From positions 1 to 64,000 of IMG/VR virus record IMGVR_UViG_3300043446_004613: a stretch of DNA of 64,000 nucleotides. One strand, given 5' to 3'. The notes under the pieces are model-generated. The model ran no database searches. It was not told where the DNA came from and saw nothing but the letters and a program-made list of their open reading frames with translations. Each line of letters starts with the position of its first letter. The stretch's first letter is position 1. The position numbers and the translations under genes were made by a program. Below, piece by piece: positions 18,029-50,945 of this stretch.

Positions 18029-18769
18029 GTGCAACGCTACGCATCAAACACATACCTACCCGGCTATCCCGGCGTGCGCATAATCCGTCGGCTCGACCCT
18101 CCGCCGCCGCAGGCTTCACCCTACATCCGGCCCAATGCCAGCATCTTCATGGCAGGTACTCCGCCGGAAGATTATATCTGGCAGAACAACACGCCGGACT
18201 TTTACGAGTACGTATCGCTGGATTTGTACACGTCGGGAATCGCAGAACCTTACAGCTTGGTGTGCTATGTTTCCGCGCTTCGGAGTAACTCCTACTTTTC
18301 AGACGCCGAACTGATAGCGCTGAGCTTTCCAAGTTTGACGTATATTGGTGATAACGTGTTCTTTGAAGGAAGTAACCTTGAGTCGCTTGATATGCCGAAT
18401 CTGGTTGCTTGCGGCGACATCACTTTTGATATTACCAGCACAAAACTTACCAGTGTGGTGCTGCCTTCGCTTGTTCAACCACCTACGATATTCGCTATCT
18501 CAAACAACTATAACGGACTGGAGACAATCAGTTTGCCGAGTTTGCAGGCTACCGACTACTGGTACCGAGCGCTGTTTACAGAGAATTCGCTTACGCAGGA
18601 GTGTGTTGATGCTTTGCTTGCCCAGTGGGTCAGCATCGGTCAAGACTTCGGCGAACTCTGGCTGTGCTACGGCAGCAACGCCGCACCTTCTGTCCAAGGA
18701 GAAATCGACGCCCAAACGTTGCGTGATCGTGGCATGCTTGTTTACACCAACCCTGATCACCTGCCATAA
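18029..18769 (+). CDS. LRR/receptor-L-like beta-solenoid protein
   Basis: Repeats L.SL..P.L; C-cap LTQECVDALLA...L.DRG..V.TN. Confidence 0.7.
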   Translation: MQRYASNTYLPGYPGVRIIRRLDPPPPQASPYIRPNASIFMAGTPPEDYIWQNNTPDFYEYVSLDLYTSGIAEPYSLVCYVSALRSNSYFSDAELIALSFPSLTYIGDNVFFEGSNLESLDMPNLVACGDITFDITSTKLTSVVLPSLVQPPTIFAISNNYNGLETISLPSLQATDYWYRALFTENSLTQECVDALLAQWVSIGQDFGELWLCYGSNAAPSVQGEIDAQTLRDRGMLVYTNPDHLP

Positions 18770-18770
18770 C

Positions 18771-19496
18771 ATGCAAAACTCACCCTACAGCTGGAGTCCA
18801 GAAACAATCGATTTTGCCGGTGCAGCCGGTTGGAATCTTGATACTGAGGGCAGTGGTATTGTAAACCTGCTTTATATTCCAACGACGCTTCGTTATCTGT
18901 ACTTCTATGGACAAAACAGTCTTGAGTCGTTTGAGGCACTTAACCTTGTACACGTAACGGATGGACTCTACATCTACTCAAATTCAGCGCTCACTACGAT
19001 TGCATTGCCCGAGCTTGTACTGGTAGAGGGTTATTTTGAACTTGATGCCTGTCCTTTGGTGACATCGCTAAGTTTGCCAAAGCTCGTAAGCGTCTACGAC
19101 TTCTACGTCTACGTCTCAAACGTGACAACGCTAAGTTTGCCAGAGCTTACTGAATCGCCGAACGAGTTTTCTGTCACCAGCTGTCCGAGTCTAACTTCGG
19201 TTGACTTACCGAAACTTACGACGTGCGACGCTTTTTACCTGAGCTATAATCCAGCACTGACCACGCTGAACGTTCCAGAGCTTGTTCCCAACAGCTGGTT
19301 CTATTTCTCAGCGTACGGCAGCGCTCTTTCTTCTGAATCCGTAAATGCCGTGCTGGCCCGCTGCGTAGCTTCGCTTGCTTGCGTTTCAGGTATTATGGAC
19401 TTCAGTGGCGGCACGAATCAGCTGCCGACAGGTCAAGGCTTGATCGACATGCAAACGCTTATCGATCGCGGTGTAGCAGTCAACATAAACACCTAG
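18771..19496 (+). CDS. LRR/receptor-L-like beta-solenoid protein (paralog)
   Basis: LTTL.LPEL repeats; same C-cap; start reassigned to MQNSPY. Confidence 0.7.
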   Translation: MQNSPYSWSPETIDFAGAAGWNLDTEGSGIVNLLYIPTTLRYLYFYGQNSLESFEALNLVHVTDGLYIYSNSALTTIALPELVLVEGYFELDACPLVTSLSLPKLVSVYDFYVYVSNVTTLSLPELTESPNEFSVTSCPSLTSVDLPKLTTCDAFYLSYNPALTTLNVPELVPNSWFYFSAYGSALSSESVNAVLARCVASLACVSGIMDFSGGTNQLPTGQGLIDMQTLIDRGVAVNINT

Positions 19497-20355: not shown

Positions 20356-21003
20356 ATGAACATTCCGGTCACATACGTACCCGATCCACTCAAAGTGGAC
20401 GGCGGAGGAACGGTAGTGCCTCAAGCGCTGCCGAGCGCAGACATGCCTATCACCGTAATACCTGCGCCGGTCTTGCCTCCCGTGCCGCTTCCGCAGTTCT
20501 CGTGTACGTTGGTACCTGATCCGAACAAAGTCGATGGCGGTGGTATCGTCGAACCGCAGCCCGAACCTGTCTCCAACATTCCGGTGACCTATGTCCCTCC
20601 GCGTTCGACCACACTGCCGACAGTTTACTTCACAGCCGCGCCGACAAGCGGTGAAGCTCCGTTGAGTGTCGTGTTCACAAACGAAAGTACGCTAGGCGTC
20701 TATTTCACGTGGGATTTTGGTGATGGCACAACCAGTAACAGCGTATCGCCGACACACATCTATACCGGAACAGGTACGTACACGGTTGAATTAGCCGGTA
20801 TCGATGCAAGCGGTACGACGTACTACACCCGCGAGAACTACATCGCAGCAGTGAACAGCGCACCGCCAGCCCCGGTTGCTGACTTTACTGCTACGCCGTT
20901 AACCGGCGATGCTCCTTTGAGTGTTACGTTTACCAACCTGAGTACGAACGGAACGTACTTCACATGGGATTTCGGCGACGGCACCATCGTCAATAATCCT
21001 TGA
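20356..21003 (+). CDS. Pro-rich protein with 1.5 PKD domains
   Basis: PDP.KVDGGG twice; F.A.P..G.APL.V.FTN.S...WDFGDG twice; TAGTTA at 20341. Confidence 0.8.
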   Translation: MNIPVTYVPDPLKVDGGGTVVPQALPSADMPITVIPAPVLPPVPLPQFSCTLVPDPNKVDGGGIVEPQPEPVSNIPVTYVPPRSTTLPTVYFTAAPTSGEAPLSVVFTNESTLGVYFTWDFGDGTTSNSVSPTHIYTGTGTYTVELAGIDASGTTYYTRENYIAAVNSAPPAPVADFTATPLTGDAPLSVTFTNLSTNGTYFTWDFGDGTIVNNP

Positions 21004-21015
21004 CTACGCGCTACC

Positions 21016-22758
21016 ATGAATCCGACTCACCTCTATATCAGCGCTGGAACGTACACGGTCGTACTCACAGCTACCGGCCCTAGCGGAACCAGTACAAAAA
21101 CACGCACGAATTACGTTGTGGTCGCTGAACCGCCAGTGATCTACTGGAAAGGTATAAATTCGGACTGGAACGATCCGAATAACTGGTATCTAGATTCAGC
21201 TGGTACAGTTCCGTCGCCGTATGCCCCTTGGCTTGCTTCTGACGCTCACTATCTAGCTTCAGACTTGGCGCTGTGTGATTCAGCCATTGAAACGCCCGGA
21301 ATCACGAGCGTTTTAAGTGCTAATGTTACCGGTACGTGCAACCTGCACGTTGAGCTTAGTGGTGGTTCTGTATACAGCGGTAAATGGCAGAGCAACGATT
21401 TTTACGCTTACAGCGGATCAATTTACGGAGGTATGTACGAGTCGCTGTTGTTCGTCGATGGCGCTACGATTTATTCAGGTACGTTCAACTCGGAAGTTAA
21501 TTTAAGCAGCGGTGAAATATACGGCGGCACCTTCAACGGAATCGTATACACATCCGGTGAAATCTACGGTGGTACGTTTAACGATTACGTAGAAAACTCA
21601 AATAACATTTGGGGTGGAACATTCAACTCTGATTTCGTAAACGGCAGCGGCAGCTTCGTGTATGACGGCAATTTCAACGGTGCCGTCACCAATAACGCAG
21701 GTGCCGGATTCTACGGTGGATTTGTTACATCGTCCTCGTTTACAAACTACGGTACCGTATCTGGGCCTGATGTAGATTATCTGAGCATCACTGTAACAGC
21801 GTTGATGAACTATGGCTTCATTTGGGGAGGCTACTGGGCGATGACCAGTATATCGACGGAAAGCGGTGAAGTACATGGTGGCACTTTCTTGACGGCGGAT
21901 GCTAGTTTTACCGTATACAATACCGACTTCAGTTCGCAGGATTATCCGCTCGTATCAGACGGAGGTACTATCTACATCGATCTAGCAACATGCCTCAATG
22001 CCTACGATCCGACATTTCCGTTTAGCGGCATAAATGGAGGTCAAGTCGTATTAGTCGAACCGCCTAACGGGTTGCTCAATTCGCTGGAAGCTTACTGGAC
22101 ATTCAGCGCACCACCCGTAAACGGAGTCTATTATTACGATGTTACCGGTAACCACACGCTCGATGTAGCCGCTAATCAGCCATCAGATGCAACAGGTATT
22201 GTCGATACCGCGCTTGTTTTTGGACAAAACAGCCCTGATTACTTGGTCGGCGACGCTATCTTTGTCGGTATGGACTACGGGCACGACGCAGTGACAATCA
22301 ACTATTGGGCACAGTACCAGTCGACGATTATCGATAGCTCGTCGGCAGCTTATCAGCTATTAAACGTTGACCAGAACTCAGGTATTGCTACTTATCAAGC
22401 GTACTGCGACCCATCCGGTGATTTTGGATACTTCAAAAATGACGAAATCGGAACCGTTAACCTCAACGGCGATGTCTATGATCGCTGGATAATGTTTACA
22501 GCCGTTCGCTTATACATTGACAATAATGGCGGATACTGGCTGTTCTACGTTGATGGTGCTTTGGTGCTTGAAGGCTACGATAACGGCATATACAGTTACA
22601 CATCTACGCACTACTTAGGAAACGATTCATCTGAAGGTTATGGTTGGATTGGTTCTGTCTGCGGCTTAGGGATATGGTCAACAGCACTGAGCGTAACGCA
22701 GATAAATCAGCTGTACAACAACGGCAATGGTTTGTCGTACTCGCATTTTACTACTTGA
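21016..22758 (+). CDS. Virion adhesin/tail-fibre-like protein: half-PKD, beta-helix (IYGGTFN repeats) and LamG/ConA domain
   Basis: NPTHLY..AGTYTV.LT; GGTFN repeats; AYW.F...W.M.T.V...YVDG...IWS.ALS..QI.QLYNNGNG. Confidence 0.8.
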   Translation: MNPTHLYISAGTYTVVLTATGPSGTSTKTRTNYVVVAEPPVIYWKGINSDWNDPNNWYLDSAGTVPSPYAPWLASDAHYLASDLALCDSAIETPGITSVLSANVTGTCNLHVELSGGSVYSGKWQSNDFYAYSGSIYGGMYESLLFVDGATIYSGTFNSEVNLSSGEIYGGTFNGIVYTSGEIYGGTFNDYVENSNNIWGGTFNSDFVNGSGSFVYDGNFNGAVTNNAGAGFYGGFVTSSSFTNYGTVSGPDVDYLSITVTALMNYGFIWGGYWAMTSISTESGEVHGGTFLTADASFTVYNTDFSSQDYPLVSDGGTIYIDLATCLNAYDPTFPFSGINGGQVVLVEPPNGLLNSLEAYWTFSAPPVNGVYYYDVTGNHTLDVAANQPSDATGIVDTALVFGQNSPDYLVGDAIFVGMDYGHDAVTINYWAQYQSTIIDSSSAAYQLLNVDQNSGIATYQAYCDPSGDFGYFKNDEIGTVNLNGDVYDRWIMFTAVRLYIDNNGGYWLFYVDGALVLEGYDNGIYSYTSTHYLGNDSSEGYGWIGSVCGLGIWSTALSVTQINQLYNNGNGLSYSHFTT

Positions 22759-41316: not shown

Positions 41317-42618
41317 CTATTGTTGATTAGACGGCACTTCGCAGCGGTGTGACCCGGTTTCTATGTCATCGTGTGAAATTAGCTTACCACAATTTTCGCA
41401 CGGATACGTAGGTGTTGAGTCGAGATGTCTGTACTCCAGCTTATGTCCGTTAGGGCACTCGTAGCAGTCGAGATCGTCAGGGTCACCGGCTTCAATACCG
41501 TCGAAACCTGCGCGTAGATAGCTGAAATCATTCAGCAAGCTACCTGTTTCGCCGCAAGCAGGGCAGCGAACAATAGGAAAACTGACACCACCGTCTACGT
41601 CTGGCTCAACAAATTCCAGTCTATGCGGAACTTCAAGCGTCCTTACGTCAATATTTTCAATATCACGCTCGCTAGGATCGTCAATATCTTCCAACAAGCC
41701 TGAACGGTAGACAGCTTCTTTCAATTTTGTATACGTCGCCGCATCAAAAGCGTCGCCAACATCAAGGGTAAGCGCTGCTACCGGCATTTTTGAGCGAAGA
41801 TGATCCAAAATATCCAGAGGGACGCCGCGCAATCGTAGAGCATCCCAGTCAATGTCTGCTCCGGCTTCGAGCACGTGTCGGTTTTCCTTCAGTGCCGGTA
41901 GAATAAGGCTTTCATAGCGCCACATTGCGTCTGAAACGCGCAAAAGGCACTCTAAAACCGGGGTAAGCTGCCGTCGATTGTGCGCTCTTTCCAGAGCCGA
42001 GCTAGTGCTCTCAAAAATTTTAGCCGTGATGCTTGCTGCTTTAGGTAGATTTTCGGCTAGGCGTTTGGCAAAGGCAGGTGCCGCAGCGCCGGTTAACCGG
42101 ATATGGTGACCGTAAACTGCATCTGGAGCTTGAAGAACGTTGCTTGTGGGGTAACCAAGTGCTTCGGCTTCCTCAATCAACTCTTCAACGATGCCGCCGA
42201 CGTCGTGTACACGGCTCGCTGCTGCCGCGATGGCGAGGCGGTCGGTACCGTTCAAGCTGCCCAGTGCGTTTACAGGCGTCCATTCGACCTTAGTGACGTC
42301 ACCACCACCCGGTTTGGCCTTGGTGTTAGGTTCAACGATGGCGTAGTAGAGCGTGACCGGCAGTTTCCGCGCCGCATGGCTGGCCAAAAAGAGCGGTTGA
42401 GGGTCGACATCCATGCCTGTCTCTTCTCTGACTTCACGCTTGCAGGATTCGACACCTGATTCGGCACCGTTGGCATGACCTCCCGGTATGCTCCAACGTC
42501 CGATTTCATCGGCAACCAGTGCAACTTCCAGTCTGTCGTTTGTTTTGCGCAGGACAACGCATAGGTACGATTGATCGTCCGTATCGGTCATCTTCTGGAT
42601 CAAAGCTTCTGCGCTCAT
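41317..42618 (-). CDS. Nudix hydrolase plus degenerate dTMP-kinase-like domain plus Zn-finger cassette
   Basis: GGH....ES....KREVREETG Nudix box; LL..SD.......ILPALK...VL; LLE|DIDDP; CPAC, CPNGH and CENC. Confidence 0.75.
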   Translation of the reverse strand: MSAEALIQKMTDTDDQSYLCVVLRKTNDRLEVALVADEIGRWSIPGGHANGAESGVESCKREVREETGMDVDPQPLFLASHAARKLPVTLYYAIVEPNTKAKPGGGDVTKVEWTPVNALGSLNGTDRLAIAAAASRVHDVGGIVEELIEEAEALGYPTSNVLQAPDAVYGHHIRLTGAAAPAFAKRLAENLPKAASITAKIFESTSSALERAHNRRQLTPVLECLLRVSDAMWRYESLILPALKENRHVLEAGADIDWDALRLRGVPLDILDHLRSKMPVAALTLDVGDAFDAATYTKLKEAVYRSGLLEDIDDPSERDIENIDVRTLEVPHRLEFVEPDVDGGVSFPIVRCPACGETGSLLNDFSYLRAGFDGIEAGDPDDLDCYECPNGHKLEYRHLDSTPTYPCENCGKLISHDDIETGSHRCEVPSNQQ

Positions 42619-43751
42619 ATCATGTAAAGGTCTATGGTGGTAGAACCGGTTACCGTGAATGTGTAAGGGTTCGAGGTGATCGTTACACCGTTGATGATCC
42701 AGTGATCAAACTGCCACGACAACGCCCCTACGATCTGTGCCGTCAATACCGCAGTAAATGCGTTTGAAAACGCTGTTGCATAGAGGCCGCCGTTTCGCAA
42801 AATCTCTAAATCCCACACACTACCGCCATGAGTATCGGTTAGATTGCAGTAGTCAGCTATTACGTTAGCGGTTTGGCTGTCCGTCGATGGGGTATAATGA
42901 TCAAATGTCCCTAGTGTATAGTATGGACTAGAAGCGCTGTACAGGTACAAGGCTGTTCCATATTTTCCGATTCCGTCTACGTTTGAAACGTTACGTATAC
43001 GAGCATTGATGCAGGAGGCAAGAATGACGTTATACGAACCCAGTTCAGCGAGCATCGAAGCGTAGGTCAGGCTGTGACCGGGAAGGGTATTAGGCCCTTG
43101 ACGGTCAGAATCAGTCACCAGTACGAACACGACGGCGGCTCCGACTCTGAACGTGTATGGGCCGTGCCCTGTAGCAGTATCACCTGCACCAGTCAGTGCA
43201 GCGTCCATCGCTTGGTAACCATCTTCAATGTTACCGAGAGTATTAAGGTTAAGCGCAGCTGCTTGTAGCTGAACAGCTGTTCCCCAATCACCGGTTCCAA
43301 CGACAAGTTTGTAGGCACGATCAGAATTAGTGGTGCTGGCATATCCCATGAGCGCGTACTTGTTTTGCGTTACTGTTCCAATTCCAGCCGCTAAAAGAGC
43401 AGCTTCCAGCTGACTCGGCATTGTTGTAAGCCAACTGTGCTCAGTTGACATAGAGCCAGACTCGTCGACTAGAAACACAATATCGACGTAATTGTCACCA
43501 GCCGGTTTTGGCTCACCGATAGCTGTCAGCGTGACGGATGTACCGGCAGGGTATTCACCCAACCCGGTTACGACCGCAGAATCTGTCGGATGAATTGTTG
43601 CGGTCAAAACGTACGTGGGATTGTACGCTGTGATGTAGTTCGTTTTAACAACCGTATCCGTGTTGTAGCGCCCAACGCCTGTTAGCGACACGGTGAATAT
43701 ACCAGCGGCGCTGTACGTGTGGATCGGATTTCTGTCGTGACTGGTTGACAT
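42615..43751 (-). CDS. Half-PKD plus vWA domain inserted in an InlB-B-repeat-like domain
   Basis: NPIHTYSAAG.FTVSL; DIVFLVDESGSM MIDAS; EDG; VLVTD. Confidence 0.8.
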   Translation of the reverse strand: MSTSHDRNPIHTYSAAGIFTVSLTGVGRYNTDTVVKTNYITAYNPTYVLTATIHPTDSAVVTGLGEYPAGTSVTLTAIGEPKPAGDNYVDIVFLVDESGSMSTEHSWLTTMPSQLEAALLAAGIGTVTQNKYALMGYASTTNSDRAYKLVVGTGDWGTAVQLQAAALNLNTLGNIEDGYQAMDAALTGAGDTATGHGPYTFRVGAAVVFVLVTDSDRQGPNTLPGHSLTYASMLAELGSYNVILASCINARIRNVSNVDGIGKYGTALYLYSASSPYYTLGTFDHYTPSTDSQTANVIADYCNLTDTHGGSVWDLEILRNGGLYATAFSNAFTAVLTAQIVGALSWQFDHWIINGVTITSNPYTFTVTGSTTIDLYMI

Positions 43752-43754
43752 AAG

Positions 43755-46400
43755 TTAATCGCCAAAGTCCCAAGTCCACGAAGCGCCGCCTCCGTTGGTT
43801 GAGAGGTTTGTGAAATTGACTACCAAAGGTAGTGTGCCTGCGGTCGGCGCGGCCACAAAATCAACGTCAAGGTACGGGATCGGCACTGCGTCAGACGGCA
43901 GCGTGAAACCCAAGCACTCAGGCATCCAGAACTCCGCCTGAGCAACGTAAAGTCCGTACTGAACCATCCAAGGCTGGCAGGTAACGACAATCGGTACGGA
44001 CTGGGCCGTATCGTACGCTGCCAGTACGGTGTCGGTGGCGTCATCGTAGTACAGTCCACGAGGCATCAGTACGGGTTTGCCGACATGGCCTGCTTGACTG
44101 AGCTTGAACGCTCCGACCTGCGCTACTGAACCGCCAGAGTAGTCTGTACCGGCAGACACGACGCCGTAGAACTTCTGTCCGTCAGTGTACGTCGTACCGT
44201 TGTACGTTACCGGCCCGACTGTCACTTCGTACTGATGTCCAGCGGTAATGCCGTCAGTAGGAATAGACGGCATTGAGCGTAAACGCGGATTGTAGATTTC
44301 GCAGAAGGCCATCCAGTTTTCGGTGCTCTCGTTTGACCAGACCGAACCGGTACCGCTAAATGTGGGTACGTCCGTACCGTAGGCTTTGACCGCCATCGTG
44401 TAGCCTTGCTGGATAGCCCGCTCAGCCCGATCAAGACATTCCTGACGCCAACCCTGAAAGCCTGCACTTAGCGGGGTAGTGTCGTACTCGTACATGCGCT
44501 GAACCTGAATCTGCTCGATGCGTACGGGCAAGGAAGGCTCATCGGTATAGTTCAGCACAAGGCTCTGTGCGCCGCTGCTCGAGGAAGCGACGGAGAACTG
44601 CCAACGGAATACGGAGGGCGTACGGTTTTCACCGAGAGCGTCCATCACGGCGTGGCTGCCTGCAAATGTACCGCTGATTGCGTAACGTCCGTACTGGGCC
44701 TTGCTCTCAAACACCAGCTTGCGGATATGCAACTGGCCTGTACCGCCTGTCCACTGGATAGGGTATTGGAACTGGCCGTTGTCGCGTACATCCATGACGG
44801 CAATCGGGCTGGTTACAACATCACCGTTCTGACCGCTAAAGGGAAGCGGCGCTACGTTCTGAACAACCGGTACAGCTTCAGAACCGGTTGCGATGTAATC
44901 CGCTTTGACGCGGAAGCCTGTTGTTTCGCCCGAGATATTGGTGTACTCCATCCACGTGTAGTACGGGCCTGCCGGAAGCGAAACGAGAAAGTTTATGGCA
45001 CTTTGGCGCACACTGCTATCCGTTGCACCGTACTGCGAGTACGTCGTGACAGCAGAAGTACCGGCAAACACCTCTCCGGGCAGATACAGTGATCCGCTGT
45101 AGTAAATGCCGTCACCGCCATCGACCATGTACAACTTGTCAGCAATACTGCCGCTTGGCACGTTGATCTCAAAGGTAGCGCCGCCGAGTGTACCGGTCGT
45201 ACTGGAGATGTTGGCGATACCTGCAAGCTCTACCCGGCCATTCGGCTGGGCGAGCACGCTCAACCGGTACGCGCCCGGCGTTACCGACCCGTCCAGCGTG
45301 ATGTCCATGACGGCTGGTACGGTGAAGCTGGCGCAGTCGTACTGCATCACTCCGCCGTAGACAGCGTCATTATTGGTGTAATTCAGGTACATCTCAGTGT
45401 CCTGCAAACCGACGCCCTTCGGCGCAAGCTGCCCAGCTTTGCCGCGCCAGTACTGCGCGTCTTTACGGTCAGGAATTTGCGTGAGAGTTTCAACGGTTTG
45501 ACCTACCTCGATACCCGGAATCGCTAGAGCATAGATTTGCGGAACATGTACTTCGTCCACACGTTCGCGCTGCCACTGGAGCGTCTTTTCGGCGATGTTG
45601 TAGATGATCTGATTTGCGCCGGGGAGCGCTGGTTCGGTCTGAAATACCCGGTGTGTACCGTCATCGTTGATGAGCGCGTAAATGTCCGGCTCACGCTGTA
45701 CCGTCCCGTACGATTCAATCTGGGTGTACAGACGGAGAGCGTGCTCAAATGGATTCTTCAGCACCTGACATAACTGGGCCACGTAACCGGCCAGCTGGTT
45801 ATCGCGGTCAGCGAGATTGCGGTCAGGTGTCTTGAAAAGATCGCGATTAAGAGGCAACGCCGGATTTATGTCGGCGCGGGCAGGCGTGCCTTCGCCCAAT
45901 GACCAGATGCTGGTGGATGGGATGATGGTGCCGGTTGCGTCTGAAAGCGGAATAGACGGATCGGCAAATGTAGCGTTGCAGGCCCGCGCCAGCACTTCGT
46001 ACACGATAGCGTCACGGCCATAAAGGTCAGCATCAGCGTAGCGGGCAGCGTCGTACGGGACGCTGACATTCGTGACGTGCCGCAGCTGAGTATTGAGTTG
46101 ACCAGCTTGATCCTCTGAAAAAGGCAGATTTGTTTCCGCCGGGCCTTGTAAAGTCGGCTTCAGTACGGAGTAGTTCCAAACGTCGCCTACTTGAACGGAT
46201 ACCTCAACGACAGCAGCGCCGACCATTAGGTCGCGGTAAGCCAGCTGACGGTCGCGCTGCTGGTACACCTTGGCGTCAAACGGCAGGTCAGGATTGACCG
46301 GCGCGAGGGTGCCGCTCAACGGTGCGACGTGCGTACCGGATTCCCATTTGATGGTGTTCCGTAACGCGAGTACTAAAGCGCTCTCTAGCTGATCAGACAT
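43755..46400 (-). CDS. Large virion structural protein ending in half-PKD
   Basis: 881 aa, beta-rich; C-terminal DF.AAPTAGTLPLVVNFTNLST...WTWDFGD*. Confidence 0.7.
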   Translation of the reverse strand: MSDQLESALVLALRNTIKWESGTHVAPLSGTLAPVNPDLPFDAKVYQQRDRQLAYRDLMVGAAVVEVSVQVGDVWNYSVLKPTLQGPAETNLPFSEDQAGQLNTQLRHVTNVSVPYDAARYADADLYGRDAIVYEVLARACNATFADPSIPLSDATGTIIPSTSIWSLGEGTPARADINPALPLNRDLFKTPDRNLADRDNQLAGYVAQLCQVLKNPFEHALRLYTQIESYGTVQREPDIYALINDDGTHRVFQTEPALPGANQIIYNIAEKTLQWQRERVDEVHVPQIYALAIPGIEVGQTVETLTQIPDRKDAQYWRGKAGQLAPKGVGLQDTEMYLNYTNNDAVYGGVMQYDCASFTVPAVMDITLDGSVTPGAYRLSVLAQPNGRVELAGIANISSTTGTLGGATFEINVPSGSIADKLYMVDGGDGIYYSGSLYLPGEVFAGTSAVTTYSQYGATDSSVRQSAINFLVSLPAGPYYTWMEYTNISGETTGFRVKADYIATGSEAVPVVQNVAPLPFSGQNGDVVTSPIAVMDVRDNGQFQYPIQWTGGTGQLHIRKLVFESKAQYGRYAISGTFAGSHAVMDALGENRTPSVFRWQFSVASSSSGAQSLVLNYTDEPSLPVRIEQIQVQRMYEYDTTPLSAGFQGWRQECLDRAERAIQQGYTMAVKAYGTDVPTFSGTGSVWSNESTENWMAFCEIYNPRLRSMPSIPTDGITAGHQYEVTVGPVTYNGTTYTDGQKFYGVVSAGTDYSGGSVAQVGAFKLSQAGHVGKPVLMPRGLYYDDATDTVLAAYDTAQSVPIVVTCQPWMVQYGLYVAQAEFWMPECLGFTLPSDAVPIPYLDVDFVAAPTAGTLPLVVNFTNLSTNGGGASWTWDFGD

Positions 46401-46402
46401 AG

Positions 46403-46834
46403 TCAGTAATAAAATTTGGCAGCACCGCTGGCGGCGATTGCTAGATCAATGTTGCTGGTGTTGTTGCTGACGACCACCGCGTAAATTCCGGGAGTTTCAA
46501 TAACGCATGGAGCGAACGGATTCACAGTACAGCTGGATTCGGTGACACCTGCGAAAGCCAGCGGGCTGGTGATTGGCGGATAATTGACACTGGAAGCGCG
46601 GTAGATTCCGACAGAGCAGCTACCCAACGCACTGTTCAAGTATGCAGGCGTGACACCGGGCGTCAGCACGGCAATCAGTGAACAAGTCAATGACCGGATG
46701 ACAAGGCGCTGATTAAGCCCAAGCTCGTAGCGGCACACGACCATCTGCTTGCCGCTGCGCACTTCGGTTTGCGCGAAGGCCATCGGCAGGTCAAATACCC
46801 GATTAAACCGGTTAGTTGTGATGAATCCGTTCAT
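46403..46834 (-). CDS. Putative virion structural protein (paralog of 46831-47319)
   Basis: Shared N-terminus (T.N..N.V.D.P.A...T..R.G) and TPG.Y...S.N...ID.....SG.A. Confidence 0.65.
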   Translation of the reverse strand: MNGFITTNRFNRVFDLPMAFAQTEVRSGKQMVVCRYELGLNQRLVIRSLTCSLIAVLTPGVTPAYLNSALGSCSVGIYRASSVNYPPITSPLAFAGVTESSCTVNPFAPCVIETPGIYAVVVSNNTSNIDLAIAASGAAKFYY

Positions 46835-47319
46835 GCGCTGTCTAGTTCAAGGCGGGCACTGCCGCTCACAGAAATACGAAAATCGATCGATGTCGTGAGC
46901 GGGATGACCGGCGACGTATCAGTGGACGGCTGCATATTACTGGAAATGATCCAAGAATACACGCCGGGAGTTGTCAGTAGCACAGCGGACGACGGATCGC
47001 GAGTGTAGACACCGAGGTCATAAGCGACCAGCACGTCCAGACCGCCAGCGGCACCGGGTGAGCCGGTGATGTAATCGCGCCGGAGGGCTAGATAAGCTAA
47101 TCCGAGGTTGCCGTAGATCAAGTTACCGCTGGTGATGTTTGCCGTGTTTACGGTCGAGCCGGAGATGGCGATGTTGGCCATTCGGTAGCTCAGGCGCATC
47201 GGTGCTTCGATTTTGACCGTAGCAGCAACAATCCAGTCGCCCATGCGCAAGTCAGTCGATGACAGCGCGATTGGAATATCAACCACGTTGTTCAGCTGGT
47301 TTTCAGTTAAGTAGGCCAT
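46831..47319 (-). CDS. Putative virion structural protein
   Basis: Paralog of the adjacent gene. Confidence 0.65.
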   Translation of the reverse strand: MAYLTENQLNNVVDIPIALSSTDLRMGDWIVAATVKIEAPMRLSYRMANIAISGSTVNTANITSGNLIYGNLGLAYLALRRDYITGSPGAAGGLDVLVAYDLGVYTRDPSSAVLLTTPGVYSWIISSNMQPSTDTSPVIPLTTSIDFRISVSGSARLELDSA

Positions 47320-47322
47320 AAA

Positions 47323-48438
47323 TTAAACAGCAGGCGGTCGCTTCACGATCGCGTTCCAAATTTGCTTTTCCTGCTCTTCGGTAAAGCCGTGCAGGTGGTA
47401 CGCTAACTCTGTCTCCACCCCCGTGCGGTAATCCTGACTTACGCCGTCGGAATACCATACGCCGACGTGAAAGTGACTGGATGACTGGCGCGTCGCGCAT
47501 TCTTTCTTTAAGAACTTGATCGCTTTATCGGCGGCAGTGATACCTTCAGAATAATCAAATTCATCCGGCTCCATGCTGACACCTTCCTCGTCTATCCAAC
47601 CCGTTTCTTCATAATCTCCGTTCGCCGCACTTTCGGGGCTTACTTTATAGTACGAAATAGTGATACGCGGGCCGGGTAAATCTGGCATGCTGGCGACAAA
47701 CTCAGCCGGGTCGTCGGGATCAGCGCTCTCGCCGATAAATGAATCGACATGCCAGCTTGAAGCCAGTCCGCGCAGCGGCTCACACAGACGCATGAAGTCA
47801 TCTAGGTACGCCTGACGGGATTTGCGCCGCTTCATCATAACACATACCTGTTTGGCAACAGCGTAGACGGCGTCCCGACGCGGGATGTAGTCCGCATCGC
47901 TCTCGAACGGCACTATGACAACAGCGTCACCGTAGTATCCGACCGTGAAGATCAATTTCAATTCGCCACCCGCGACATAGTCACGTGGATTACCGGTATT
48001 ATGATTCGTGTGGGACGAAAGCCGGAACTCGTTGTAGCGCGTACCGTAGTCAATGAGCAGCCGCCAGCTTTCGCTTCCGTAGTGCCCGCGTGAGTATTCT
48101 TCCTCCTCCATACCCCAGTTGGAAGGTAGTTCTAGGTCGTGAATATAGTCAATCGGGCTGACGTCTTCTTCCGACTCGCCAAGGTTATTCGGATGCAGCG
48201 GGTCAAACCAGATGCCGCAGTCGCCGCAATCAACCAAGCCTTCATCATCCGGCTCGGTCACCTTAGTGCTCTTGCATGCCGGGCAGTGACCGGGAAAAAT
48301 CCGGTCAAGGGCGGCCTGCGGATCGAACGCATCGACCGCGTTGTCGAGCAAACTGCGCACAACGTCGCGAGCTTCAGCAATCGTCACCGAACGCTGAATC
48401 GAAGCTAGAAAATCGAGATTGGCAGGTGTCTTAGACAT
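47323..48438 (-). CDS. 371-aa modular polyprotein (3 cassettes)
   Basis: VVRSLLD; LGE|SEEDVSPIDYI; IGE|SADPDDPAEFV; Zn ribbon. Confidence 0.7.
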   Translation of the reverse strand: MSKTPANLDFLASIQRSVTIAEARDVVRSLLDNAVDAFDPQAALDRIFPGHCPACKSTKVTEPDDEGLVDCGDCGIWFDPLHPNNLGESEEDVSPIDYIHDLELPSNWGMEEEEYSRGHYGSESWRLLIDYGTRYNEFRLSSHTNHNTGNPRDYVAGGELKLIFTVGYYGDAVVIVPFESDADYIPRRDAVYAVAKQVCVMMKRRKSRQAYLDDFMRLCEPLRGLASSWHVDSFIGESADPDDPAEFVASMPDLPGPRITISYYKVSPESAANGDYEETGWIDEEGVSMEPDEFDYSEGITAADKAIKFLKKECATRQSSSHFHVGVWYSDGVSQDYRTGVETELAYHLHGFTEEQEKQIWNAIVKRPPAV

Positions 48439-48754
48439 TCAAGATACCTTCGGCAGCCAGCCGTGTTTTGGTTGGGATACGGAGTTCAGTACCTTCCGGC
48501 ACCGCCACTAACGGGTCGATGATGTTGTTTACACTCGCGATGACCCACCACAGCGCCGGAGTGTTGTAGAAAGAGTTGGCCAGCAGGTCTAGGCGCGGCA
48601 CACCAGCAGAAGGCATCACCCAAAGCTCGTCCGTGTAATTCTGGACGACTGCGGGGTGCATAAGGCCAAACACGACGTTTTCACCACCCAAGTCATAGAC
48701 CGGGGTCTTTGAAAACATCGAGTACTGCGGTAGTTCTATGCGTTGACCAGCCAT
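48431..48754 (-). CDS. LysM-like baseplate wedge/tail protein
   Basis: RLDLLA..FY..P.LWWVIA.VNNI.DP....G..LRIP; TAGTTA at 48761-48766. Confidence 0.8.
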   Translation of the reverse strand: MAGQRIELPQYSMFSKTPVYDLGGENVVFGLMHPAVVQNYTDELWVMPSAGVPRLDLLANSFYNTPALWWVIASVNNIIDPLVAVPEGTELRIPTKTRLAAEGILNV

Positions 48755-48767
48755 ACGCTTTAACTAC

Positions 48768-50945
48768 CTAAGCCCTGAATACCTTAGTGCTGGTGTACCC
48801 TTTGCTTGGTAACGGGATGTCCACAGGCGGTGCTTCCGACGACAACTGCACCTGTTGGCCGGTGTAAAGTGTCGGAGAATTCTGGCTCATGATCGTCATT
48901 TTCTCATCCGCGTTGACCGCGTTGAAGAAAGCTCCGGCGGCGGCGTCGGTTGTATCTTTTGACCCGTCTGGCGGATGATCGAACTTCTTATCCATCTCCA
49001 GCAGGTTTTCCGCCTCACGGATCATCTGAGGATTGCGGTGCAGCCGGATGCGGTGTTCTTCAAATCCGGCACGCCAAGCAGTATACACTGACTTGTCCCG
49101 GTCGAGTGACAGCTTGTCGGTAGCAAAGTTTTTAGCCTGAAGTTCCTGAAGGGGAAGTTCGGACTGGTACATGTCCGCCGTAATCAACCCGAAGCGGTAT
49201 CCGCAGACGTCGCGGAGCCAGAAGAAAAAGTCGCGTATCTTGGCGATGCTGATCGGCTTGTTCTGCCCGGCGCAGATTGTCAGGATGAAATCATATTCAA
49301 CGACAAGCCGGTAATCGGAAAAAGGCTGACCGTCGCGTACCAAGCCGTCGACCTTCTGGCTGCCTGCAAGATGGCAGATCGCCACCCCGGCCAGTGTTTG
49401 GGTCGCCAAGTCGATGTGCGCATAACGAAGCGCCTGCGGGTGACGGATCGGTTGGATACGTGAGGATACGCGGGTTAGAAACGTCTTGTGGTTCAGGTAG
49501 TCCCACGCGTGCTTTTTGTCCTCCATGCTCAACGGAATGTGACCGACACCGGGCATGAGCGGATCAGGCACCTTCTCTTCAACCGATACCGCTAGGCAGT
49601 GCTCGATGTCGATTAGGCTTGGGAATAAGCGGTGAGCACCTCCAACGCTGATACCTGACAGGTTTTGCAGCTGCGCTTTGCAGTTACGCCGAAAAGCTTC
49701 GATGTAAAACTTAGGCACCAGTTCCGTCCGTGCGCCGTTAGGCGGCTCTTCGTGGATGTCGGTTCCTATCTTGGAGCCGTCTTCTTTATACCAGCCGCTC
49801 AACATGTACGGCTCCATGTTTTTCAAGCCATACGCGACACGGAACCAGTGATGATCCGGGCCGATACCCGGTAGTGCGTGCCGTTTGATCTTGTAGACGG
49901 CGTTGCGGATGACCAGCTGACTGACCTCTTCTTCGGCGACGCCGGGAGCCAGTGTGCGGTTGTTGATTTCGCGCACGCGATTAGCTTCGTCGATTTCGGA
50001 TACAACCTTTTCAGTGAAGCTCGATTCGTCCGCCGCTGAAGAGGCGATGATGGAGAGCGCCGGAAGAAACGTGGCTACCTTCTGGAAACGGTTGGCGATA
50101 CGTGTGCGCACTTGATCGTAAAGCTCGTACGCTTTCAAGTCCGGGTCTTTTTCCAGACGGAAGTTACCTTCGTCCAGCCCGATACCGACAAGGTTACGAC
50201 CCAGCACGTGCTGGCCTTTTGAACCGGCAGTCAGCCAGATACGCGAGCTTCCGCCGTCAGGCAGGGTATGCTGCATCGGGATGCGGTAGCTGCTGTAATC
50301 GCTTTCCGGGTCAAACCCGCAGATTTCGATGAAATAGGCGCTATCAGCCATGAAGCTCATCGCGGTACCAAACGCGGTATCTTTCACAGCTTCTTTCGTA
50401 ACGGACAGCAGGTTGTATACGATATTGGAGTTACGGTTCAGACCGAAATAGTTCTGCGGATTCTTCAAGAGCGTAGACAGCATCAAACGGTACAGAATCA
50501 GCGTCACCATGATGACAGTCTTTCCGATACCGAGTGATCCGGTGATGACCATGTTATGGATTTTGCTCTCCAAATCCATGTGTTCGTTCAGCAGGCTTAT
50601 CCATGCAGGCCACATGCCTTCGTTTTCACCGGGCACGTGTCGCCACGTCTTTCCGAGGTAAAAATCGTCTTCAATGAACTCCTTGATCGTTGGCGGTTTT
50701 CGGATGTAGTCGAAGTGCCACAGCTGCTGGATCACCGCTTGATCCATCCGCTGGTTCTTGGCAGCCGCTTCCAGCATAGCCTTAGCAATACCTTGCAGGC
50801 GCTGCCATTCAAGGTCGGTCAGCGACGGATCACGCCTATCAAAGATAAACGGGCGCTCGCCTGCCAAGACTTGCTCAGCATGCCGTTCGGCGCGTTCCGT
50901 GGGCATAGGGTGAACCACGGTTTTCTTCTCGTTCGTACCAGTCAT
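48768..50945 (-). CDS. terL: Terminase large subunit
   Basis: Walker A GSLGIGKT, Walker B GIGLDE, RNaseH-like HIDLA, TADMYQS and DHPPDGSKDTTDA. Confidence 0.9.
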   Translation of the reverse strand: MTGTNEKKTVVHPMPTERAERHAEQVLAGERPFIFDRRDPSLTDLEWQRLQGIAKAMLEAAAKNQRMDQAVIQQLWHFDYIRKPPTIKEFIEDDFYLGKTWRHVPGENEGMWPAWISLLNEHMDLESKIHNMVITGSLGIGKTVIMVTLILYRLMLSTLLKNPQNYFGLNRNSNIVYNLLSVTKEAVKDTAFGTAMSFMADSAYFIEICGFDPESDYSSYRIPMQHTLPDGGSSRIWLTAGSKGQHVLGRNLVGIGLDEGNFRLEKDPDLKAYELYDQVRTRIANRFQKVATFLPALSIIASSAADESSFTEKVVSEIDEANRVREINNRTLAPGVAEEEVSQLVIRNAVYKIKRHALPGIGPDHHWFRVAYGLKNMEPYMLSGWYKEDGSKIGTDIHEEPPNGARTELVPKFYIEAFRRNCKAQLQNLSGISVGGAHRLFPSLIDIEHCLAVSVEEKVPDPLMPGVGHIPLSMEDKKHAWDYLNHKTFLTRVSSRIQPIRHPQALRYAHIDLATQTLAGVAICHLAGSQKVDGLVRDGQPFSDYRLVVEYDFILTICAGQNKPISIAKIRDFFFWLRDVCGYRFGLITADMYQSELPLQELQAKNFATDKLSLDRDKSVYTAWRAGFEEHRIRLHRNPQMIREAENLLEMDKKFDHPPDGSKDTTDAAAGAFFNAVNADEKMTIMSQNSPTLYTGQQVQLSSEAPPVDIPLPSKGYTSTKVFRA

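What the first reader, a model, noticed from the sequence alone, without database searches (positions are those of the whole stretch)
43620..43880. Second PKD split at the same structural point (site 2), suggesting split-PKD complementation as a connector for swappable adhesin tips
Seen: the 881-aa protein ends ..VNFTNLSTNGGGASWTWDFGD* and the next gene starts MSTSHDRNPIHTYSAAGIFTVSLTG (junction GAT TAA CTT ATG). Together they give a complete PKD with Met in place of the Gly of WDFGDG. Two independent splits just after WDFGD, with different stop codons and each placing an adhesin-type domain (LamG, vWA) downstream, argue against accident. Caveat: stop-N3-ATG spacing is common in this genome, so being in frame is not by itself evidence of readthrough.
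Basis: partly seen in the sequence, partly recalled or inferred. Interest (0 to 1): 0.68.

Follow-up and report, generated by a model that had tools for sequence, protein, structure and literature searches.

The report
Conserved two-gene split PKD domain
In a clade of freshwater jumbo phages one small Ig-like (PKD) domain is encoded half at the end of one gene and half at the start of the next, exactly where close relatives have the two proteins fused, so the split domain most likely snaps an integrin-like adhesin head onto a large carrier protein.

Summary
Gene A (43755-46400, minus strand, 881 aa) ends in WDFGD-TAA. After a 3-nt spacer, gene B (42615-43751, 378 aa) starts with the other half of the PKD. 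The PKD model reads straight through the stop (40 bits). It is not an artefact or a recent accident. At least eight related metagenomic phage lineages keep the same junction, WDFGD-stop(TAA or TGA)-NNT-ATG. Both halves are under purifying selection (dN/dS about 0.2), like the rest of both proteins.

In two close relatives (62-63% identical) A and B are one polypeptide lacking exactly the split PKD. A's half is predicted unfolded on its own (pLDDT 32-46). A complex prediction gives weak support: ipSAE 0.50 against 0.01 for the best control.

Best reading (about 0.6): the halves co-fold in trans, after coupled translation. This tethers B, a MIDAS vWA head nested in a B-repeat sandwich, to A's C-terminus. 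Readthrough cannot be excluded, but nothing favours it.

"Swappable tips" is not shown: every split lineage carries the same vWA tip. Site 1 (TGA at 21001, same loop, 7 residues later) has no known relatives.

The parts
43911..46400 (-). Gene A, conserved core (residues 1-830) of a large uncharacterised phage protein family; contains a CBM6/35-like jelly roll at about residues 388-568
   Evidence: AF2 pLDDT about 88 over 1-830. VIA-align Z 12-13, rmsd 2.5, about 120 residues aligned to CBM6/CBM35. 937 family members at E<=1e-3, most of them ending about 22 aa after the QPWM motif.
43758..43895 (-). N-terminal half of the PKD domain (A residues 836-881; three strands ending in WDFGD)
   Evidence: PF18911 match across the stop. 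Colinear with an intact PKD. pLDDT 32-46 when A is folded alone. dN/dS 0.23.
43755..43757 (-). Stop codon TAA of gene A, at the position of the Gly of WDFGDG
   Evidence: TAA or TGA in relatives.
43752..43754 (-). 3-nt spacer CTT (NNT in all lineages)
   Evidence: This is the generic junction type of this genome.
43620..43751 (-). Start codon of gene B and C-terminal half of the PKD domain (B residues 1-44; NPxHxY and the last strands)
   Evidence: pLDDT 49-61 in B folded alone. dN/dS 0.21. Met1 is kept in all full-length homologues.
42618..43619 (-). Remainder of gene B: a B-repeat-like beta sandwich (residues 45-85 and 346-378) with a vWA/MIDAS domain (about 86-345) nested in it
   Evidence: Pfam VWA and Flg_new_2, both below cut-off. 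Invariant D96-x-S98-x-S100. Foldseek probability 1.0 to integrin beta headpieces and the pilus adhesin SpaC.
20356..21003 (+). Site 1 upstream gene (215 aa): proline-rich repeats, one intact PKD (20650-20844), N-half of a second PKD ending WDFGDGTIVNNP, stop TGA 21001-21003
21016..22758 (+). Site 1 downstream gene (580 aa): starts MNPTHLY (C-half of the PKD, 21016-21123), then GGTFN-type repeats and a Laminin_G_3-like C-terminus (about 22285-22707)
   Evidence: PF18911 reads through the TGA at 54.7 bits. PKD_4 covers residues 2-36. Laminin_G_3 E 1.2e-4, 22.7 bits, below the 27.6 cut-off.

Best explanation
The PKD domain is a natural two-piece domain that joins two separately made proteins.

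A and B are translated from one mRNA. B's ATG lies 3 nt after A's stop and has no Shine-Dalgarno sequence, which is the rule in this genome. B is therefore probably made by termination-reinitiation, next to the just-finished A (inferred).

A's last 46 residues (three strands ending in WDFGD) and B's first 44 residues (NPxHxY plus the remaining strands) cannot fold alone. They co-fold into one PKD beta sandwich (predicted, not shown).

This non-covalent joint holds B's integrin-beta-like vWA/MIDAS head at A's C-terminus. That is the same place where close relatives carry the head as a covalent fusion (shown by comparison). The head most likely binds a ligand through its metal site, i.e. it acts as an adhesin (inferred from fold and invariant residues).

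The split could have begun as a nonsense change at the Gly codon of an A-PKD-B fusion. It would have been tolerated because this loop is a permissive split point. That would also explain why site 1 is cut in the same loop (inference).
For: 1. Conservation. The junction WDFGD-stop-NNT-ATG-(S/G/A)TS.ERNP.H.Y is found in the window and in L004, L005/6, L007/8 and L009/10. Those loci were found through protein homology, not through the motif. It is also found in L065, L069, L071 and L073. The stop is TAA or TGA and the spacer varies.

2. Selection. dN/dS is 0.23 for the N-half and 0.21 for the C-half, against 0.18 for the A core and 0.23 for the vWA. Amino-acid identity is 0.63 in both halves. PKD-defining residues are invariant.

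3. Natural fusion. P0030 equals A 1-835 (63% identical) plus 2 aa plus B 45-378 (44% identical, E 1e-71). It lacks exactly the split PKD, in the same synteny. L076 is the same kind of fusion. P0030 groups with the split clade (SH-aLRT 99).

4. The PKD profile reads through the stop at 40 bits, and the halves are colinear with an intact PKD.

5. The halves are low-confidence when folded alone: pLDDT 32-46 and 49-61.

6. Complex prediction on A 826-881 plus B 1-48 scored ipSAE 0.50 against 0.01 for the best of 3 controls, verdict 'weak support'. That mark was reached by 58 of 80 solved complexes and 2 of 110 mismatched pairs. Scores of 0.60 or under came from only 7 of those 80 solved complexes and from both of the mismatches that passed. 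The runs agree in at least 98% of contacts and the partner's pLDDT is at least 79.

7. B has its own conserved Met, and the junction is the genome's ordinary coupled-gene junction.
Against: There is no experimental evidence. By the tool's own calibration, the complex prediction is only a weak pass.

The genes are in frame in every lineage, so a minor readthrough fusion cannot be excluded.

Neither A nor B is shown to be a virion protein. Pfam and PHROGs are blank for A and its neighbours. Fold matches to tail proteins have low TM scores.

No relative with an intact, unsplit PKD between A and B was found among the proteins and loci read, so the origin is inferred.
Confidence: 0.6

Rival explanations
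1. Stop-codon readthrough: a fraction of ribosomes read through A's stop and make an A-PKD-B fusion with a covalently intact PKD. This fusion is the functional form, alone or alongside trans-complementation.
For: A and B are in frame, with only one codon between stop and ATG, in all lineages. Site 1 is also in frame. TGA-C, seen in some lineages, is a leaky context in E. coli (general knowledge).
Against: The stop alternates between TAA and TGA, and the next base varies (C, A, G). The genome encodes no suppressor tRNA. All three stops end ORFs genome-wide (TGA 110, TAA 85, TAG 62), and 94% of the genome is coding under table 11. The junction is the genome's ordinary stop-N3-ATG type, 13 of 100 tight junctions. 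B's Met1 is conserved, which readthrough alone would not need. Junction spacings of neighbouring genes are equally conserved, so a kept frame is not informative.
Confidence: 0.15
2. Tolerated fossil: a nonsense mutation cut an ancestral fusion. The two halves no longer interact and serve only as floppy tails, and B works unattached or attaches to A by other surfaces.
For: An unrelated metagenomic multi-PKD gene (L068) shows that a plain TGA at the Gly of WDFGDG does occur by accident. Site 1 has no comparative support.
Against: Both halves keep PKD-specific residues, and their dN/dS of about 0.2 equals that of the folded domains, at dS above 1. The halves are present together or absent together: fused relatives lack both. 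The complex prediction is far above its controls.
Confidence: 0.15
3. Artefact or alternative genetic code: the stop is an assembly or sequencing error, or is read as an amino acid.
For: None beyond the in-frame arrangement.
Against: The same junction appears in independent assemblies from different samples and archives (ENA, Logan, JGI). At site 1, two runs from a single sample (possibly the window's own source) were assembled separately by Logan. Their contigs, at depths 26 and 18, show no difference at the junction. TAA and TGA are both used at the site and all three stops terminate genes. There is no suppressor tRNA.
Confidence: 0.02

Closest known systems
Fused homologues of the same family (P0030, L076; more distantly P0054, P0059, P0032, P0044)
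   Same: Same A core, same B-repeat/vWA head, same synteny (138-aa gene, then A, then NUDIX gene).
   Different: They are one polypeptide, with no PKD at all between core and head. The split clade has a PKD at that point, cut by a gene boundary.
Donor-strand complementation in chaperone-usher pili (general knowledge)
   Same: An incomplete Ig-like beta sandwich is completed in trans by another polypeptide, giving a stable non-covalent joint between subunits of an adhesive fibre.
   Different: In pili a single strand is donated, and a chaperone and an usher are needed. Here about half the domain (three strands each) comes from each partner, the domain is a PKD, and no chaperone or usher genes are evident.
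Naturally split inteins such as DnaE-N/DnaE-C (general knowledge)
   Same: Two genes each encode half of one small domain, and the halves co-fold with each other.
   Different: Inteins then splice themselves out and ligate the flanks. The PKD has no splicing chemistry and would stay as the joint. The two genes here are adjacent and translationally coupled.
'Genes in pieces' of T4-like phages, e.g. split NrdA or DNA polymerase in phage Aeh1 (general knowledge, not checked in the library)
   Same: A phage gene is cut in two and the products reassemble into a working protein.
   Different: Those splits are caused by an inserted homing-endonuclease gene and affect enzymes. Here the gap is 3 nt, nothing is inserted, and the cut lies inside an 85-residue Ig-like domain.
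Ig-like domains added to phage structural proteins by programmed frameshifting (Fraser et al. 2006, J Mol Biol 359:496, cited in PMC13370021; content from general knowledge)
   Same: An accessory Ig-like/PKD-type domain sits at the C-terminus of a large phage protein, next to an unusual translational junction.
   Different: There the recoding site lies before the Ig-like domain and is a -1 frameshift. Here an ordinary stop and an ordinary start lie inside the domain.

Membership tests
PKD domain (Pfam PF18911 / PF00801) | Profile match above the curated cut-off over the whole domain | tested here: met
   Met only when the two genes are read together: 40 bits (cut-off 27), profile 16-84 of 85, one TAA inside. 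A alone gives no Pfam hit, and B alone gives no PKD hit at E<=0.01.
PKD domain (Pfam PF18911 / PF00801) | WDFGDG motif and NPxHxY / GxYxVxL strands in colinear order | tested here: met
   The alignment with the intact PKD of the same genome is colinear. The Gly of WDFGDG is replaced by the stop codon.
PKD domain (Pfam PF18911 / PF00801) | A single folded beta sandwich formed from the two halves | tested here: inconclusive
   Complex prediction ipSAE 0.50 against best control 0.01, 'weak support'. No structure is available.
von Willebrand factor A domain with MIDAS | Profile match above the curated cut-off | tested here: not met
   PF00092 19.9 bits (cut-off 23.8); PF13519 18.6 bits (cut-off 27).
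von Willebrand factor A domain with MIDAS | vWA fold and the DxSxS metal-site motif | tested here: met
   Foldseek probability 1.0 to integrin beta I-domains, SpaC and a bacterial vWA. D96, S98 and S100 are invariant in 10 homologues. Model pLDDT is only 72.
Programmed stop-codon readthrough | A conserved leaky stop and context, or a suppressor tRNA | tested here: not met
   The stop is TAA or TGA and the following base varies. Only tRNA-Met is found in the genome.
Programmed stop-codon readthrough | Existence of the extended protein | not testable with these tools
   No RNA or protein data. The only runs holding the phage are DNA contigs.
Translational bypass (T4 gene 60 type) | Matching take-off and landing codons conserved across relatives | tested here: not met
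   The window has GAT ... GAC 24 nt apart. Relatives have GAA at the landing position.
Chaperone-usher donor-strand complementation | One missing strand supplied by the neighbouring subunit; chaperone and usher genes present | tested here: not met
   Here each partner supplies about half of the strands. The neighbouring ORFs searched gave no chaperone or usher Pfam hit: 46403-50945 and NUDIX 41317-42618, but not ORF 48431-48754. It works like this system but is not a member.

The most novel reading that the evidence does not exclude
Split PKD halves are a natural, general-purpose protein 'snap fastener' in these jumbo phages. The same genome uses two such pairs (site 1 carrying a LamG-like tip, site 2 a vWA tip). 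These pairs are either orthogonal or interchangeable, so adhesin tips can be exchanged between carrier proteins by moving a gene that starts with a C-half.
Probability: 0.15. Interest if true: 0.85.

Novelty: new variant of a known kind. Interest (0 to 1): 0.62.

Why it matters
Proteins joined by fragments of a single small domain are known from pili (one strand), from split inteins, and from engineered tools such as split GFP. A conserved natural half-and-half split of an Ig-like domain used as a joint does not appear in the literature searched.

If confirmed, three things follow:
- It gives a compact natural heterodimerisation tag of about 45 plus 45 residues.
- It shows that gene fission inside a domain can be stable over long divergence. 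A, B and both halves are only about 45-65% identical between lineages.
- It is a warning for annotation: 'truncated' domains at ORF ends in phage genomes may be halves of working domains, and the two ORFs should be treated as one functional unit.

It also pairs a large, completely uncharacterised family (937 hits at E<=1e-3) with a variable set of C-terminal tips.

Tried and rejected
- **Artefact or alternative code:** rejected.
- **Translational bypass** from the GAT before the stop to a GAC 24 nt downstream: the landing codon is GAA in relatives, so rejected.
- **Survey of IMG/VR** for WDFGD followed by TAA or TGA: 50 loci, none of them a PKD split. WDFGD-stop-N3-ATG gave 0 hits. The scan needs the exact motif, does not cover TAG, and may leave out the window's own record.
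- **Same pattern in JGI metagenomes:** 12 hits. Four belong to the same clade with the same vWA tip. One (L068) is an unrelated multi-PKD gene that looks like a plain nonsense mutation. The rest are chance matches.
- **Site 1 relatives:** there are no full-length homologues of the 580-aa protein or of the 215-aa protein's N-terminus.
- **What A is:** no hit came from Pfam, PHROGs, PDB sequence search or the ESM Atlas. Fold searches found only the CBM-like jelly roll, plus low-TM matches to phage tail proteins. Source databases give no names.
- **Neighbouring genes:** the window's large ORFs gave almost nothing in Pfam or PHROGs.
- **Other collections:** no relatives in prokaryote genomes and no similar DNA in GenBank phages.
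- **Not run:** cross-pairing of site 1 and site 2 halves, because complex prediction is capped at one job. I also did not fold a readthrough fusion, because nothing in the genome shows another code.
- **Errors:** one search failed because the relatives' records are not held, and because the alignment was too diverse.
Full report
**What the window is.** The window is the first 64 kb of a 211,113-bp IMG/VR virus record, estimated 93% complete. It comes from a freshwater metagenome. It has no DNA similarity to GenBank phages and almost no Pfam or PHROG matches. Under table 11 about 94% of the genome is coding. All three stop codons end ORFs (TGA 110, TAA 85, TAG 62). The only tRNA is tRNA-Met. 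Nothing suggests another genetic code, so none was used.

**The observation.** The genes lie on the minus strand.
- Gene A (43755-46400, 881 aa, P0001) ends in ...SWTWDFGD followed by TAA.
- The next three bases are CTT.
- Gene B (42615-43751, 378 aa, P0002) then starts MSTSHDRNPIHTY....

The Pfam PKD_4 model matches 43629-43832 across the stop at 40 bits, over profile positions 16-84 of 85. The N-half, an X at the stop, the spacer residue and the C-half were aligned with the intact PKD of the same genome. Every strand is present once and in order. The stop, not the Met, occupies the Gly of WDFGDG.

The genome has only three PKD domains, and two of them are interrupted. The other is site 1:
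- The 215-aa gene (20356-21003) ends WDFGDGTIVNNP followed by TGA.
- After 12 nt, the 580-aa gene (21016-22758) starts MNPTHLY.
- The PKD model reads through at 54.7 bits.

Site 1 is cut seven residues later than site 2, but in the same loop.

**Not an artefact and not recent.** B has eight full-length homologue clusters at 44-48% identity, plus one shorter fragment (P0012) that lacks the N-terminus. All eight full-length ones start M-(S/G/A)-T-S-x-(E/D)-R-N-P-x-H-x-Y.

I read the DNA upstream of four of them, from ENA and Logan assemblies of different samples (L004, L005/6, L007/8, L009/10). In each, an 874-883-aa A homologue ends in WDFGD, followed by a stop, three bases and ATG. The stop is TAA or TGA, and the spacer is CTT, ACT, GCT or CCT.

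A pattern scan of JGI metagenomes added four more contigs of the clade (L065, L069, L071, L073), again with the vWA gene downstream.

For site 1, two runs from one sample were assembled independently by Logan. Their contigs, at depths 26 and 18, show no difference at the junction.

**Both halves are under selection.** Across five lineages:

| Region | Mean amino-acid identity | dN/dS |
|---|---|---|
| N-half of PKD | 0.63 | 0.23 |
| C-half of PKD | 0.63 | 0.21 |
| A core | 0.67 | 0.18 |
| vWA domain | 0.55 | 0.23 |

Median dS is above 1 in each of these regions. The residues that stay invariant are the ones that define a PKD domain. Decaying remnants would not look like this.

**The natural control.** A belongs to a large uncharacterised family: 937 hits at E<=1e-3, 116 of them at E<=1e-30. 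Most members end about 22 residues after a QPWM motif. Others carry diverse C-terminal extensions.

Several members carry the B module as a covalent extension. The closest is P0030 (1178 aa):
- Its residues 1-835 match A 1-835 at 63% identity.
- Its residues 838-1178 match B 45-378 at 44% identity (E 1e-71).

P0030 is thus A plus B minus exactly the 46 + 44 residues of the split PKD. It sits in the same synteny: the 138-aa gene upstream and the NUDIX gene downstream. IMG/VR contig L076 (62% identical) is the same kind of fusion and has no W.FGD motif.

In core-only relatives the NUDIX-like gene follows A directly. In a quick maximum-likelihood tree, P0030 groups with the five split sequences (SH-aLRT 99), either nested among them or sister to them. 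Tip states change at least 12 times across 39 sequences.

So B is a C-terminal appendage of A. It can be absent, fused, or, in this clade, attached through a PKD that is cut by the gene boundary. The two halves occur together or not at all.

**Structure predictions.**
- A was folded with 46 homologues. The core is confident (mean pLDDT 88, pTM 0.78), but residues 831-881 score 32-46.
- B folded with 10 homologues has pLDDT 49-61 over its first 40 residues.
- The rest of B is a vWA domain nested in a B-repeat-like sandwich. This is the topology of integrin beta headpieces, which together with the pilus adhesin SpaC are its top Foldseek matches (probability 1.0).
- The MIDAS motif D96-x-S98-x-S100 is invariant. 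The Pfam vWA scores are below cut-off.
- A's core contains a CBM6/35-like jelly roll at about residues 388-568 (Z 12-13, rmsd 2.5, about 120 residues aligned). Matches to phage tail proteins in BFVD have low TM scores. Whether A is a virion protein is not shown.

**Complex prediction.** I used A 826-881 and B 1-48, each with its own alignment. The result was ipSAE 0.50 (three runs: 0.48-0.51) against 0.01 for the best of three controls, with the verdict 'weak support'.

By the tool's calibration, the mark was reached by 58 of 80 solved complexes and 2 of 110 mismatched pairs. Scores of 0.60 or under came from only 7 of the 80 solved complexes, and from both mismatches that passed. The runs agree in at least 98% of contacts, and the partner's pLDDT is at least 79. 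Taken alone this is weak. It does add to a guess that the comparative evidence had already made likely.

**Translation.** The in-frame arrangement is not evidence for readthrough.
- Among 100 tight same-strand junctions in this genome, stop-N3-ATG is the second commonest type (13). ATGA overlaps are the commonest (34).
- Most of those stop-N3-ATG junctions also have T before the start codon.
- Only 22 of 257 genes have even a 4-base Shine-Dalgarno match.
- Spacings at the neighbouring junctions are equally conserved among the relatives.

Other points also argue for an ordinary coupled gene boundary rather than a recoding signal. The stop alternates between TAA and TGA, its 3' neighbour varies, no suppressor tRNA exists, and B keeps its own Met. 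A T4 gene-60-like bypass (GAT to GAC, 24 nt) is possible only in the window and not in relatives. A low level of readthrough cannot be excluded without protein data.

**Most likely mechanism.** A and B are made in equal amounts from one mRNA, B by reinitiation next to the finished A (inferred). Their half-domains co-fold into one PKD sandwich (predicted). That joint holds the vWA head where relatives have it fused (supported by comparison). The head binds a ligand through its metal site (inferred). I put this at about 0.6. Readthrough as the functional route gets 0.15, non-interacting fossils 0.15, and artefact or recoding 0.02.

**What is not supported.**
- Every split lineage carries the same vWA tip.
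- No other tip was found behind a WDFGD-stop junction in IMG/VR or JGI metagenomes. Both scans needed the exact motif.
- The two split PKDs of this genome are 48% identical in DNA, with at most 7 identical bases in a row. They are not recent copies and are poor substrates for homologous exchange.
- Site 1's genes have no relatives. Its downstream protein is LamG-like only by a sub-threshold match.

One detail at site 1 may hint at a joint between halves of different origin. The N-half runs through '...NNP' and the C-half starts 'MNP'. The NP of NPxHxY is therefore present on both sides, and a plain nonsense mutation would not produce that. This is speculation.

Tips do vary greatly at the C-terminus of the A family, but as fusions.

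**Comparison with known systems.** The device works like donor-strand complementation in pili and like the association step of split inteins. It is a member of neither. Half a domain comes from each partner, no chaperone or usher was found among the neighbouring ORFs searched, and there is no splicing chemistry.

It resembles phage 'genes in pieces', but nothing is inserted between the pieces and the cut lies inside an 85-residue domain. It differs from Ig-like domains added by programmed frameshifts, because stop and start lie inside the domain.

Five searches of the paper library with differing term sets found no description of a split PKD or split Ig-like domain in phages. I rate it a new variant of a known kind (fragment complementation after gene fission), with interest 0.62.

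Noticed in passing
L004:1-2962 compared with window 48768-50945 (-): In the 228-kb relative, the gene at the position of the window's 725-aa gene has 998 residues and carries Hom_end_hint / LAGLIDADG hits, i.e. an intein. The window's copy has only a weak P-loop-like match (nSTAND3 / helicase, E 0.06-0.17) and no intein.
   Followed up: no
G000:C1:99969-100652 (outside the window): ARAGORN finds a tRNA-Met and, next to it, a tmRNA-like gene with a long tag peptide. These are the only such genes in the 211-kb genome. The tmRNA call was not verified.
   Followed up: no
window 42618-43619 (-): B's vWA domain is inserted inside a B-repeat-like (Flg_new_2) sandwich: the N-part is residues 45-85 and the C-part 346-378. 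This is the same nested topology as the integrin beta I-domain inside the hybrid domain. Relative P0120 has the sandwich without the vWA insert.
   Followed up: partly
whole genome G000: Only 22 of 257 ORFs have a 4-base Shine-Dalgarno match. Tight junctions are dominated by ATGA overlaps and by stop-NNT-ATG. This suggests a host with little Shine-Dalgarno use and heavy reliance on translational coupling.
   Followed up: partly
L068:4554-4577 (+), contig OFSA01000169.1: An unrelated multi-PKD ORF has TGA at the Gly of WDFGDG, followed in frame by a 49-aa ORF holding the rest of that PKD. It looks like a plain nonsense mutation or an error, and serves as an example of what an accident looks like.
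   Followed up: no
window 18029-19496 (+): Just upstream of site 1 lie two overlapping ORFs with similar C-termini. The longer one (18345-19496) has a weak BspA-type LRR_5 match, the other was not searched, and they are probably two tandem paralogues. Site 1 may therefore sit in a cluster of adhesin-like genes.
   Followed up: no
window 20356-20640 (+): The N-terminus of the 215-aa site 1 protein contains a proline-rich direct repeat (NIPVTYVP ... DP.KVDGGG.V.PQ, twice). It has no homologues in the 5.8-billion-protein collection.
   Followed up: partly
P0030 residues about 885-895; L076: In the fused relative P0030 the first Asp of the MIDAS motif is Gly (VGESGSM). L076 keeps Asp (VDCSGSM). 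The metal site may be lost in one fused lineage.
   Followed up: no
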